Part shown: positions 4,340 to 6,164 of the stretch, in pieces
Position numbering within the stretch: the stretch's first letter is position 1
Layout of the letters: each line of letters starts with the position of its first letter
Sequence record: AP017925.1
DNA length: 64,000 nt
Strand: one strand, 5' to 3'
Notes under the pieces: model-generated
Database searches by the model: none
Told to the model about the DNA's origin: nothing
Seen by the model: only the letters and a program-made list of their open reading frames with translations
Program-made: the position numbers and the translations under genes

Positions 4340-4592
4340 GCAGGGGGTGGCGAAACCAAGGCTAACCCGTCCCTGATCCCGCCACCCTTCTCCCACACCG
4401 CCCTCACCGCGTGCTCGCGGCCAGAGGACTACATTGGGAAGGCTGCGTCGACAGACGCTCCGGCGGCTAGCGGGCCGCACCATGGCGTCAGCTGTCTTCC
4501 CTGCGTGGGGAGCTTTGCGGCCCGCGATCTCGCGAGGCGCGCTCCCCATCGTTCAGCGCGGGCGAGTCTCTCAATCCCGCCCGCGCCTGAAC
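4340..4592 (-). ncRNA. candidate GC-rich structured ncRNA (~250 nt) at the 3' end of the tRNA array
   Basis: Stems GTTCAG-CGCGGGCG/CGCCCGCG-CTGAAC, GGGGAGC/GCTCCCC, GGGAAG/CTTCCC, a 17-bp GGGTGGCGGGATCAGGG/CCTTGGTTTCGCCACCC hairpin with G-U pairs on the minus strand, and a possible long-range GCAGG/CCTGC pairing. Visibly more GC-rich than flanking DNA. Confidence 0.6.
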
Positions 4593-4610
4593 ACTTCACT
4601 ACAACAATAC

Positions 4611-4718
4611 TGATCCCTCGGGTTAGGATTCGAACCTACGACCTGCGTCTGGTATGGTAGGCCGGCCGCTGAGGACCCGCCTTGGTGACGCCGCTCTGCC
4701 GGACTGAGCTACCGAGAG
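4611..4718 (-). tRNA. tRNA-like RNA with a 37-nt insert in place of the anticodon loop (identity undetermined; ends UCA, not CCA)
   Basis: Acceptor CTCTCGG/CCGAGGG, TA, D-arm GCTC-AGTCCGGCA-GAGC, anticodon stem GCGTC/GACGC enclosing 37 nt (4650..4686), variable region AGGTC, T-arm GTAGG-TTCGAAT-CCTA(A)C. Confidence 0.7.
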
Positions 4719-4733
4719 TATGCTACGGAAAAC

Positions 4734-4809
4734 TGGCTCCAAGGGCTGGGTTCGAACCAGCGACCAACGGCTTAACAGGCCGCTGCTCTACCGACTGAGC
4801 TACCTCGGA
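4734..4809 (-). tRNA. trnN: tRNA-Asn (anticodon GTT)
   Basis: 76-nt canonical cloverleaf: TCCGAGG/CCTTGGA, D-arm GCTC/GAGC, anticodon loop CT-GTT-AA, T-loop TTCGAAC, encoded CCA. Confidence 0.97.
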
Positions 4810-4822
4810 ATACTACTAAACT

Positions 4823-4933
4823 TGGTGCAAAAGGTACGATTCGAACGTACGAAGTCTTTTCCCATCCTTAGATGAGTCACCTTGTGATGATACGGTTGTA
4901 TCTCACTGCCTTAAACCACTCAGCCACTTTCGC
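4823..4933 (-). tRNA. class II (Leu/Tyr/Ser-like) tRNA-like RNA with a 25-nt insert in place of the anticodon loop
   Basis: Acceptor GCGAAAG/CTTTTGC, discriminator A, CCA. Class II-style D-arm TGGCTGAGTGGTTTAAGGCA, T-arm GTACG-TTCGAAT-CGTAC. Stem GTGAG/CTCAT encloses 25 nt (4877..4901) and is followed by a long variable arm. Total 111 nt. Confidence 0.7.
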
Positions 4934-4949
4934 TTGGAAACTACACTCC

Positions 4950-5200
4950 TAGAGCCAGAAGCAAGGCAGCTAACGGCGTCTCCATGACGGTTCTGCTGCC
5001 GCTGCCGAGCTAGTGGCCTAAGGGCTATAGTCTCGCTGCTAACAAATCCATAACTTGAGAGTTGCGCTGATGAACGCTTCTCCCCTACACTTTAACGAGG
5101 ATCATCACTCCTCGCAACTAGAGGCCTTTCGGCGGTAATCCTAACGCTGCCATCCCGGTCAGGGGATGGCCAGCAAACTCGAAGAAAACTAGAGCAGCTA
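4950..5200 (-). ncRNA. candidate structured RNA or leader upstream of the tRNA array
   Basis: Stems GCTG-GCCATCCC/GGGATGGC-AGC, GCC-GAAA-GGC (GNRA loop), GAGGA/TCCTC, and GGCAGC/GCTGCC enclosing CGTC/GACG. No credible ORF. Confidence 0.35.
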
Positions 5201-5288
5201 CTCCAGAGAGTCCTCAAGTGATAGGATACAGATACAGTGTGAGTCTCTGCATGAAATAAAGACAACGTGTATTTTTTTACTCTACTTC

Positions 5289-6164
5289 TTAGTTTGCGCC
5301 AACGAGCCAATTAGCCAAACGCTTGATACCCGCGAGCAACTTGCCGAAGATACCTTGCGGTTTGGACGTAGTAGCAGCGCTAACGGCTTCAGGTTGAATT
5401 GCTGGCTCTGCAACCACTGCTTTCTCTTCAGAGGCAGGAACTTCCGGCTCCTGTTCTACAGGATCGCGAAGTACGATCCCGTCACCGAAGGCCGGGTACG
5501 GTGCTGCGTCGTAGTCTTCCTGATCCATCAGAAGCTCGTTAGTCCACTGGTACGTGGCGTGGAAGCCGCTGAGGATATCGAGCCACCAAACGCTACCAGT
5601 CGGAGACGGCGTGATGGCGATCTTGTGCTCAGTGCCTTCTTCGTCAGTGACGATCAGGCAAGGCATGGCCAGCCACTTGTACTGCTCCTTGATTGTGCGG
5701 CTCTTGAATGCAAACTCCACACGGATGTCGTGCGGCTTCAGGAAGGTGTTTTCGAACTGCTTGTTTACCTTAAGCGAGCGGAACACCGATTCGTATTCTT
5801 GCTTCGCCAGCGCCTCCTTGTTCTTCACGCAGGAGATGCCGAGGTTGCACACAGCATCGCAGAACACGAACCAGCGGTTGAAGCGCTCGGCGAATTCCTT
5901 TGGCGCGAGTTTTTCCTTCTTGATGGCGGACAGTTGGTCGGCCACGATGTGCGGCAAAGCAGCCACGAACTCGTCGCGGTCGAAGTAGTAACCGTCGGCT
6001 TGTGCACGCTCTTCATCGATGTTCTTCTGGACTTCTTCCAGCGTACCGAGGATGCGGTTGTAATTCGGATCGATGTGCTCGATCGCTGCAATTTCTTCAT
6101 TCACCGCAGCCACGCCTGCTGCAATGTCGTCTTGTACTTCCTTCGGGATATTGGAATCACTCAT
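5289..6164 (-). CDS. hypothetical protein (~291 aa)
   Basis: Start moved to MSDSNIP (6164) because the longer track ORF runs through a terminator. Codon usage matches other phage genes. Confidence 0.8.
   Translation of the reverse strand: MSDSNIPKEVQDDIAAGVAAVNEEIAAIEHIDPNYNRILGTLEEVQKNIDEERAQADGYYFDRDEFVAALPHIVADQLSAIKKEKLAPKEFAERFNRWFVFCDAVCNLGISCVKNKEALAKQEYESVFRSLKVNKQFENTFLKPHDIRVEFAFKSRTIKEQYKWLAMPCLIVTDEEGTEHKIAITPSPTGSVWWLDILSGFHATYQWTNELLMDQEDYDAAPYPAFGDGIVLRDPVEQEPEVPASEEKAVVAEPAIQPEAVSAATTSKPQGIFGKLLAGIKRLANWLVGAN

What the first reader, a model, noticed from the sequence alone, without database searches (positions are those of the whole stretch)
4823..4933. Class II (Leu-like) tRNA body with the anticodon loop replaced by two mini-hairpins
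Seen: intact GCGAAAG/CTTTTGC acceptor, A73-CCA, class II D-arm and perfect T-arm. The GTGAG/CTCAT stem encloses ATAC-AACC-GTAT-CA-TCAC-AAG-GTGA (two hairpins). An alternative fold is one 9-bp GTGA-GATAC/GTATC-A-TCAC arm with a 4-nt loop, and neither fold gives a 7-nt anticodon loop. Established: LeuRS and SerRS largely ignore the anticodon, so such an RNA could still be charged. Inference: an aminoacyl donor for non-ribosomal transfer (e.g. L/F-transferase, cell-wall or lipid aminoacylation) or a synthetase/nuclease decoy.
Basis: partly seen in the sequence, partly recalled or inferred. Interest (0 to 1): 0.78.

Follow-up and report, generated by a model that had tools for sequence, protein, structure and literature searches.

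The report
Anticodon-less tRNA-shaped gene in jumbo phage
Next to its single normal tRNA gene, a jumbo phage of Ralstonia carries a gene with a complete tRNA body but a sealed anticodon arm, so it cannot read codons; the gene is real, but it has no relatives, so whether it is a working tRNA mimic or a disabled tRNA cassette stays open.

Summary
The window is Ralstonia jumbo phage RP12. Window 4823-4933 (minus strand) encodes a 111-nt tRNA-shaped RNA. It has a 7-bp acceptor stem, an encoded ACCA end, a D-arm with G18G19 and a perfect T-arm. It scores 35.8 bits on Rfam tRNA (cut-off 29) and has no 5-bp/7-nt anticodon hairpin in any register.

A 9-bp arm capped by AACC sits in the anticodon-arm slot. 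A two-tier extra arm capped by UAAG follows, then C48 and the T-arm.

"Leu-like" is not supported. The D-loop is of the Ser/Tyr/Gln type, and only A73 fits Leu.

The gene is one cassette of a fast-changing tRNA array inserted into a conserved non-coding RNA gene. Sister lineages carry none, Asp-Asn, Gln, or Gln-Asp-Asn-Tyr at the same site. None has this cassette. RP31 is 100% identical here, so there is no comparative evidence.

Three things argue for a retained non-decoding tRNA mimic:
- A second insert-bearing tRNA-like gene in the same array is conserved with compensatory pairs.
- Similar oversized tRNA-shaped genes sit in other phages' tRNA arrays.
- RP12 encodes RtcB and an RNA ligase.

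A freshly disabled cassette remains a serious rival. Expression, charging and function are untested.

The parts
4823..4933 (-). tRNA-shaped gene X, 111 nt including the encoded ACCA. The 5' G is at 4933 and the 3' A at 4823.
   Evidence: Rfam RF00005 gives 35.8 bits. ARAGORN -i calls it. Sequence read directly.
4927..4933 (-). Acceptor 5' strand GCGAAAG. It pairs with 4827-4833 (CTTTTGC). ACCA lies at 4823-4826.
   Evidence: pairing probability 0.97-1.0.
4908..4924 (-). D-arm with a 3-bp stem and the loop AGUGGUUUAA, including G18G19.
4884..4906 (-). Arm 1 in the anticodon-arm slot: GUGA-GAUAC / GUAUC-A-UCAC. It has 9 bp, one bulged A and an AACC tetraloop. It has no anticodon.
   Evidence: pairing probability 0.95-1.0.
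4852..4882 (-). Two-tier extra arm. The outer tier is AGGU/ACUU (probability about 0.5). The inner tier is CUCAUC-UAAG-GAUGGG (4861-4876, probability 0.95 or more). C at 4851 (X position 83) follows as the C48-like partner of G15.
4834..4850 (-). T-arm GUACG-UUCGAAU-CGUAC.
4734..4809 (-). The neighbouring normal tRNA-Asn(GTT), 13 nt downstream of X.
4614..4718 (-). Second tRNA-like gene (TL2). It carries a 32-nt GC-rich insert in the anticodon loop and is conserved in the FLC phages.
4941..5250 (-). Conserved 5' part of the non-coding RNA gene into which the tRNA array is inserted. It ends in GGAGTGTAG.
4563..4610 (-). Start of the conserved 3' part of the same non-coding RNA (GTATTGTTGTAG ... 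GAGAGACTCG).

Best explanation
X is a tRNA-derived gene cassette.

Transcription and processing (inferred). It is transcribed with the surrounding non-coding RNA and tRNA-Asn. RNase P and 3' trimming then cut it out like a tRNA, because it keeps the acceptor/T minihelix, the D/T elbow nucleotides and an encoded ACCA end.

Structure (shown by sequence and folding). The mature RNA of about 111 nt is an L-shaped class-II-like body. Its anticodon arm is sealed as a 9-bp hairpin with a 4-nt loop, and it carries a long two-tier extra arm. It therefore cannot read codons and offers no anticodon loop to anticodon nucleases.

Function (inferred). Most likely the phage keeps it as a non-decoding tRNA mimic. 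It would be a body-and-CCA-end look-alike that occupies host factors recognising tRNA shape rather than the anticodon. Candidates are tRNA-directed toxins or defence nucleases, or modifying and charging enzymes. It would act alongside the phage's swappable tRNA cassettes and its RtcB and RNA-ligase repair enzymes.
For: - The body is intact: all 7 acceptor pairs, 5 T-stem pairs, 3 D-stem pairs, and the conserved U8, A14, G15, G18G19, A21, T-loop and C48. Only the anticodon region is aberrant.
- The 57-nt centre is not decayed. It is unusually well folded: z=-2.97, and 0.85% of 2000 dinucleotide shuffles fold as well.
- The spacer and CCA pattern matches that of the real tRNAs in the array, and no promoter or terminator lies inside it.
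- TL2, in the same array, is also tRNA-shaped with a blocked anticodon loop. It is kept in two diverged lineages, with compensatory changes in the anticodon stem, T-stem and acceptor stem.
- Cassettes, TL2 included, are swapped or hypervariable between two phages that are 99% identical overall. The leader is 323/323 identical, but Asn is 54/76, Gln 62/79 and TL2 108/119. That is the pattern expected for a module under conflict-driven selection.
- Analogous oversized class-II-like tRNA-shaped genes, some with a short-loop hairpin in the anticodon-arm slot, sit inside tRNA arrays of unrelated uncultivated phages and in one groundwater contig.
- RP12 encodes RtcB (E=9e-129) and an RNA ligase.
Against: - X is an orphan. 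It is found only in RP12 and RP31, which are 100% identical over 11.1 kb, so there is no covariation or selection evidence for X itself.
- It is absent from every sister lineage: FLC4-3B, FLC1-1B, an IMG/VR relative and the metagenomic relatives.
- It is absent from a rhizosphere relative that has the Asn gene.
- The array turns over quickly, so a recently broken cassette is plausible.
- No RNA-seq of RP12 infection was found, so transcription, processing, stability and charging are all unshown.
- No target protein is identified.
- Many known anticodon nucleases recognise the anticodon stem-loop, which X lacks (established knowledge).
Confidence: 0.42

Rival explanations
1. X is a dead cassette. 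It was a class-II-type tRNA gene whose anticodon region was recently wrecked by a short insertion or duplication. It is still transcribed and perhaps processed, but has no function and awaits deletion.
For: - It occurs in a single lineage and is absent from all relatives.
- The array gains and loses cassettes rapidly.
- The centre contains an imperfect 14-15-nt direct repeat (UCAUCACAAGGUGA / UCAUCUAAGGAUGG). Arm 1 is a near-inverted copy of the 5' anticodon-stem strand. Both are typical products of replication slippage or template switching (reading).
- Pseudo-tRNAs are common in phage arrays (established knowledge).
Against: - The body shows no damage at all.
- Removing the 18 nt that ARAGORN proposes does not restore a good tRNA. 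The anticodon would be ACU with G37, the extra-arm stem is poor, and the cloverleaf anticodon stem still loses to the CUCAUC/GAUGGG hairpin.
- The centre is more structured than chance.
- The sister element TL2 is under selection.
Confidence: 0.33
2. X is an aminoacyl carrier. Host SerRS or LeuRS, which ignore the anticodon, would charge X. It would then donate the amino acid to a non-ribosomal acceptor.
For: - The ACCA end, acceptor and long extra arm are intact.
- The D-loop is Ser-type with C11-G24.
- SerRS and LeuRS are anticodon-independent (established knowledge).
Against: - The identity signals are mixed: A73 rather than G73 for Ser, C2-G71, and a non-Leu D-loop.
- No FemAB, L/F-transferase or MprF-C domain was found in RP12 (weak negatives).
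Confidence: 0.07
3. X is a pre-tRNA whose insert is removed at the RNA level. Two endonuclease cuts would be sealed by the phage RtcB or RNA ligase, giving a decoding tRNA.
For: - ARAGORN can model an 18-nt 'intron' that yields tRNA-Ser(ACU).
- RP12 has RtcB, the ligase of archaeal and eukaryal tRNA splicing, and an RNA ligase.
Against: - No bulge-helix-bulge motif can be drawn at the proposed sites (reading).
- No splicing-endonuclease domain was found in RP12 (a weak negative).
- The insert is far too short for a group I intron.
- The spliced product has an atypical loop (A34, G37) and does not fold as a cloverleaf.
Confidence: 0.05
4. X is pure processing punctuation. It would be kept only as an RNase P/RNase Z cleavage signal that separates the 5' half of the surrounding non-coding RNA from the tRNA array.
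For: - The array sits inside a conserved non-coding RNA, directly after GGAGTGTAG.
- X is the first cassette after that RNA.
- tRNA-like processing signals are known elsewhere, for example mascRNA (established knowledge).
Against: - Lineages with an empty site keep the non-coding RNA continuous.
- In other lineages an ordinary tRNA (Gln or Asp) is the first cassette.
- tRNA-Asn lies only 13 nt away and would give the same cut.
- So nothing requires X specifically.
Confidence: 0.08

Closest known systems
Phage T4 species 1 and species 2 stable RNAs (rnaC, rnaD)
   Same: They are small stable RNAs of unknown function, encoded directly behind a tRNA in the phage tRNA cluster on the same strand. 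rnaC ends in a T-arm (CCGGG-UUCGAAU-CCCGG) plus an acceptor-like helix.
   Different: There is no sequence similarity to X. Neither T4 RNA reaches the tRNA model: the best hit is 17.5 bits to tRNA-Sec, below the cut-off. X is a complete tRNA body scoring 35.8 bits and has an encoded CCA.
Pseudo-tRNA genes in phage tRNA arrays
   Same: X is a tRNA-derived sequence in an array that standard finders miss or flag, and it is non-decoding.
   Different: Typical pseudogenes show scattered stem mismatches. X has a flawless body and a centre that folds better than chance.
TL2, the neighbouring tRNA-like gene of RP12 and the FLC phages
   Same: It lies in the same array. It has a tRNA body, the anticodon loop is blocked by an insert that forms a hairpin, and the FLC copies encode CCA.
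   Different: TL2 has a class-I body. It keeps the 5-bp anticodon stem with a 32-41-nt loop insert. It is conserved across two lineages, whereas X is not.
Bacterial and phage YrlA (Y RNA-like tRNA mimics)
   Same: These are non-decoding RNAs that mimic the tRNA D/T/acceptor module. They are genomically linked to RtcB in some bacteria (established knowledge).
   Different: YrlA is permuted: its acceptor is closed and its ends lie in a Ro-binding stem. It also needs Ro60. RP12 showed no TROVE domain. The Rfam YrlA hit (29.8 bits, cut-off 69) is an artefact spanning the Asn T-arm and the TL2 D-arm.
tmRNA tRNA-like domain; mascRNA; plant-virus tRNA-like structures
   Same: These are tRNA mimics without a decoding anticodon that are processed or charged by tRNA enzymes (established knowledge).
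   Different: X has no tag reading frame, and ARAGORN finds no tmRNA. X is a free-standing gene with a full D-arm, which tmRNA and mascRNA lack.
Allo-tRNAs: Ser-type class II bodies with unusual arms (Mukai et al. 2017, from memory)
   Same: They have a Ser-type D-arm and very long extra arms. Examples turned up here in MAGs L073-L075.
   Different: Allo-tRNAs keep a canonical 7-nt anticodon loop and decode. X does not.

Membership tests
tRNA (Rfam RF00005) | Covariance-model score at or above the gathering score | tested here: met
   35.8 bits against 29.
tRNA (Rfam RF00005) | 7-bp acceptor stem, discriminator base and CCA; T-arm with a TTCRANY loop; D-loop with G18G19 | tested here: met
tRNA (decoding) | 5-bp anticodon stem closing a 7-nt loop with U33 and a purine at position 37 | tested here: not met
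   The Rfam alignment puts 25 nt where 7 are expected. An exhaustive scan finds no stem of 5 bp or more with a 7-nt loop. The only in-register candidate, GUGAG-AUACAAC-CGUAU, has one mismatch and two G-U pairs and loses to arm 1.
Class II tRNA, Leu isoacceptor type | A73 plus a Leu-type D-loop (A15, the G18G19 position) and an extra arm (E. coli identity rules, established knowledge) | tested here: inconclusive
   A73 is present. The D-loop AGUGGUUUAA is Ser/Tyr-like and close to the D-loops of the tRNA-Gln genes in the sister phages. Charging cannot be tested with these tools.
Class II tRNA, Ser isoacceptor type | Long base-paired extra arm, Ser-type D-loop with 20a/20b, C11-G24, G73 | tested here: inconclusive
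   The D-loop type and C11-G24 are met. The extra arm is present but two-tiered with internal loops. The discriminator is A, not G.
Intron-containing tRNA (archaeal/eukaryal type) | Bulge-helix-bulge at the splice sites, and a splicing endonuclease available | tested here: not met
   No 3-4-3 motif can be drawn around ARAGORN's 18-nt insert. PF01974 is absent from RP12 (a weak negative). The host was not examined.
tRNA with a group I intron | Self-splicing intron of about 200 nt or more in the anticodon loop | tested here: not met
   The insert is 18 nt, and there is no intron family hit in Rfam.
tmRNA | tRNA-like domain plus a tag reading frame | tested here: not met
   ARAGORN -m finds none in the genome.
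YrlA / Y RNA | Ro-binding stem, permuted tRNA-like module and a Ro60 partner | tested here: not met
   The Rfam hit is 29.8 bits against a cut-off of 69 and lies on neighbouring genes. No TROVE domain was found.
Phage tRNA-cluster stable RNAs (T4 rnaC/rnaD kind) | A non-decoding small RNA gene inside a phage tRNA cluster with partial tRNA-like ends | tested here: met
   The position and tRNA-like ends are met. There is no homology, and stability of the RNA is not testable here.

The most novel reading that the evidence does not exclude
X, TL2 and the oversized class-II-like tRNA-shaped genes found inside other phages' tRNA arrays may form an unrecognised functional class. These would be phage-encoded, anticodon-less tRNA body mimics with CCA ends. 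They would act as decoys or sinks for host tRNA-directed defence toxins that read tRNA shape or the acceptor end, or as chargeable carriers. They would complement nuclease-resistant tRNA cassettes and RtcB/ligase repair.
Probability: 0.2. Interest if true: 0.8.

Novelty: new variant of a known kind. Interest (0 to 1): 0.45.

Why it matters
Phage tRNA genes are increasingly seen as counter-measures to defence systems that cut tRNAs. If this is a real mimic, an RNA that keeps everything a tRNA-binding protein sees except the anticodon would be an RNA-based anti-defence or regulatory device of a new design. It would also be easy to test: delete it and plate the phage on strains with different defences.

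This work also shows that standard annotation misses such genes. RP12 is published with one tRNA. Yet similar genes are scattered through tRNA arrays of uncultivated phages.

If X is only a broken cassette, the value is smaller. It would document how fast the tRNA cassette array, nested inside a conserved non-coding RNA, turns over in Ralstonia jumbo phages.

Tried and rejected
**Homologues of X**
- Distant-mode blastn against 50,697 phage records found only RP12 and RP31. Against plasmids it found nothing.
- Sampled 31-mers across public runs recovered only the tRNA-Asn part.
- IUPAC scans of IMG/VR, JGI metagenomes and GTDB genomes found no clear homologue. They gave one architectural analogue, L069, and many unrelated oversized tRNA-like genes.
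- RP31 cannot serve as an independent copy, because it is 100% identical over 11.1 kb.

**Synteny route.** Homologues of ORF132 led to 11 metagenomic loci. Only L024 has a tRNA there, and it is Gln.

**Chimera of Gln and Asp.** MAFFT aligned X's two halves to those two genes. I rejected this reading because the acceptor strands pair perfectly and are unlike either gene.

**tmRNA, YrlA, group I intron and bulge-helix-bulge intron.** All rejected; see the membership table.

**Repeats of the centre elsewhere in RP12.** None found.

**Phage-encoded users of a charged tRNA, CCA-adding enzyme and Ro60.** None found. The same search type missed the RNA ligase that hmmscan detects, so these negatives are weak.

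**Promoter and terminator scan.** It found nothing useful inside the array.

**L069's neighbours.** They have no Pfam match, so its origin is unknown.

Full report
**What and where**

The window is Ralstonia phage RP12, a phiKZ-related jumbo phage of 279,845 bp. The window covers genome positions 127,255-191,254. The published annotation and paper report a single tRNA, Asn(GTT). The finding lies in a gene-free stretch of about 990 nt between ORF131 and ORF132, on the minus strand.

**Checking the observation**

Read on the minus strand, 4933-4823 runs as follows:
- acceptor GCGAAAG, then U8 and G9;
- a 3-bp D-stem with the loop AGUGGUUUAA;
- A26, then a 57-nt centre;
- the T-arm GUACG-UUCGAAU-CGUAC;
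- acceptor CUUUUGC, then ACCA.

Rfam's tRNA model scores it at 35.8 bits against a cut-off of 29. The alignment places 25 nt where the 7-nt anticodon loop belongs. It is one of two tRNA hits in the genome.

Default ARAGORN misses it. With introns allowed, ARAGORN calls it 'tRNA-Ser(ACU) with an 18-nt intron'. Over the whole 280-kb genome that permissive mode calls only three genes, all contiguous: X, tRNA-Asn and a second insert-bearing tRNA-like gene, TL2. The feature is real and not a chance match.

**Which fold**

- In the ensemble, GUGAG/CUCAU has probability 0.00 and the two hairpins 0.95 or more.

In the favoured fold the layout is that of a class II tRNA:
- A26;
- a 9-bp arm with one bulged A and an AACC tetraloop in the anticodon-arm slot;
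- one A;
- a two-tier extra arm, with AGGU/ACUU outside and CUCAUC-UAAG-GAUGGG inside;
- a C placed to pair with G15 as C48 does;
- the T-arm.

The centre alone folds better than 99% of dinucleotide shuffles (z=-2.97). No stem of 5 bp or more closing a 7-nt loop exists in any register. The RNA cannot present an anticodon.

**Isotype**

'Leu-like' rests on A73 and the first acceptor bases. The D-loop has the Ser/Tyr pattern and also resembles the tRNA-Gln of sister phages. I consider the isotype unassignable.

ARAGORN's spliced product would carry anticodon ACU with G37 and a poor extra-arm stem. It still does not fold into a cloverleaf. I treat that call as an artefact of the free intron placement.

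**Context**

Aligning RP12 with its only cultured relatives, FLC4-3B and FLC1-1B, shows a conserved RNA-only locus. The same holds for an IMG/VR genome and for metagenomic contigs reached through ORF132 homologues.

A conserved leader ends in GGAGTRTAG, and a conserved downstream part begins near GTATTGTTGTAG ... GAGAGACYCG. In L019, L021 and L023 these two parts are only about 40-60 nt apart, with no tRNA between them. The tRNA array is therefore an insertion inside one conserved non-coding RNA gene.

The inserted cassettes differ by lineage:

| Lineage | Cassettes at the site |
|---|---|
| L019, L021, L023 | none |
| IMG/VR genome | Asp-Asn |
| L024 | Gln first (contig ends there) |
| FLC phages | Gln-Asp-Asn-Tyr-TL2 |
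| RP12 | X-Asn-TL2 |

Every cassette ends in an encoded CCA followed by a short spacer, most of which contain GTAG or TAGTAG.

FLC4-3B and FLC1-1B are 99% identical genome-wide. Across this locus they compare as follows:

| Segment | Identical positions |
|---|---|
| Leader | 323/323 |
| Asp | 77/77 |
| Tyr | 88/88 |
| Gln | 62/79 |
| Asn | 54/76 |
| TL2 | 108/119 |

Individual cassettes are therefore being exchanged or are evolving very fast.

**X has no relatives**

- RP31 is 100% identical to RP12 over at least 11.1 kb around X, so it adds nothing.
- No other phage, plasmid, IMG/VR, JGI or GTDB sequence holds a recognisable homologue.
- A rhizosphere relative that carries the Asn gene shows no X-like sequence in that position.
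- No RNA-seq of RP12 infection was found.

Neither covariation nor expression can be assessed for X itself.

**Indirect evidence for function**

1. TL2 is a tRNA-shaped gene with a GC-rich hairpin inserted in its anticodon loop. It is kept in both RP12 and the FLC phages, with compensatory changes in the anticodon stem, T-stem and acceptor stem. This clade does maintain a non-decoding tRNA-like RNA.
2. An IUPAC scan asked for the same D-arm type and a T-loop spaced too far apart for a normal class II tRNA.
   - It returned 36 IMG/VR loci (about 28 distinct sequences) with perfect acceptor and T stems and aberrant centres. Default ARAGORN recognises 2 of the 36.
   - Several sit inside dense same-strand tRNA arrays.
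   - L053/L062/L067 and L049 have the X-like layout: a hairpin with a 4-nt loop in the anticodon-arm slot, then a two-tier arm, then C48. The groundwater contig L069 is similar but with a 6-nt loop.
   - The set is heterogeneous. It may include intron-bearing tRNAs of archaeal or eukaryotic viruses, so I use it only as a sign that such genes recur.
3. RP12 encodes RtcB (E=9e-129) and an RNA ligase (PF09414, E=3e-14). This is the enzyme kit associated with repair of cut tRNAs.

**Weighing**

The intact body, the over-structured centre, TL2 and the recurrence in other arrays favour a retained non-decoding mimic. I put that at 0.42. The single-lineage distribution, the rapid cassette turnover and the repeat-like make-up of the centre favour a recently disabled cassette, at 0.33. 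The repeat-like features are an imperfect 14-15-nt direct repeat, and an arm 1 that is nearly an inverted copy of the 5' anticodon-stem strand.

Three other readings are less likely:
- Charged carrier (0.07). No phage-encoded user was found, but those negatives are weak (against 48/103).
- RNA-level excision (0.05). There is no bulge-helix-bulge motif, no endonuclease, and the product would be poor.
- Processing punctuation alone (0.08). An ordinary tRNA does that job in sister lineages, and tRNA-Asn lies 13 nt away.

**Comparison with known systems**

The nearest described analogues are the T4 stable RNAs species 1 and 2. They lie directly behind tRNA-Arg in the T4 tRNA cluster, and rnaC ends in a T-arm and an acceptor-like helix. 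They share position and partial mimicry with X but no homology. X is much more tRNA-like than either. X is not a YrlA, tmRNA or intron-bearing tRNA by the tests in the membership table.

**Verdict**

This is a real, unannotated, non-decoding tRNA-shaped gene. It is best classed as a new variant of the phage tRNA-cluster stable-RNA / pseudo-tRNA kind. Its function is open and easy to test.

Noticed in passing
window 4614-4718 (-); L002 3062-3172 (-); L005 3062-3172 (-): TL2 is a second tRNA-shaped gene with a 32-41-nt GC-rich hairpin insert in the anticodon loop. It is conserved between RP12 and the FLC phages, with compensatory pairs in the anticodon stem, T-stem and acceptor stem. The FLC copies encode ACCA; the RP12 copy has AUCA instead.
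   Followed up: partly
window 4563-4610 and 4941-5250 (-); L019 about 5470-5600; L021 about 5205-5330; L023 about 5055-5180: The tRNA array is an insertion inside one conserved non-coding RNA gene. In tRNA-less relatives GGAGTRTAG and GAGAGACYCG lie about 40-60 nt apart. In RP12 they are 377 nt apart, with X, Asn and TL2 between them.
   Followed up: partly
L002 and L005, 3060-3550: FLC4-3B and FLC1-1B are 99% identical overall. In this locus the leader and the Asp and Tyr cassettes are identical, but Gln (62/79), Asn (54/76) and TL2 (108/119) differ. This looks like cassette-level swapping or hypervariation.
   Followed up: partly
L033-L068 (IMG/VR), e.g. L053 1873-1951, L067 1202-1280, L035 1629-1711, L049 5086-5177: There are dozens of oversized class-II-like tRNA-shaped genes with perfect acceptor and T stems but aberrant centres. 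Many lie inside phage tRNA arrays and ARAGORN misses them. L053/L062/L067 combine a tetraloop hairpin in the anticodon-arm slot with a canonical ACGGA-UUGGAAA-UCCGU hairpin further 3'.
   Followed up: partly
L034, L040, L050, L058, L036, L066: This is a conserved family sharing the acceptor GGAAGGA/TCCTTCC-A. Five of its six members share a 58-70-nt centre with conserved blocks (GGAATA, GCTGAAA, ATAGGCGG, GAAGAAAGCGTAGGACATC); L066 has a different 53-nt centre. Its nature is unknown.
   Followed up: partly
L073 6824-6903, L074 3654-3730, L075 4910-4991 (alphaproteobacterial MAGs): These have Ser-type class II bodies with very long extra arms and canonical anticodon loops reading GTT, CAA and TAT. 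They resemble allo-tRNAs.
   Followed up: no
RP12 genome 196759-203231 (outside the window; L031, L086): This cluster holds an RNA ligase (PF09414 plus a PHA02142 OB fold), NAPRTase, PRPP synthetase and RtcB. The whole-genome family search for PF09414 returned nothing, but hmmscan of the protein finds it. Negative 'own' searches should therefore be treated with caution.
   Followed up: partly
window about 5246-5290 (-): A conserved A/T-rich stretch (AAAAAATACA...) followed by ATGCRRAGACTCACAC marks the start of the RNA locus in RP12, L024 and the IMG/VR relative. It is probably a phage promoter and transcript start, but the sigma-70 scan does not match it.
   Followed up: no
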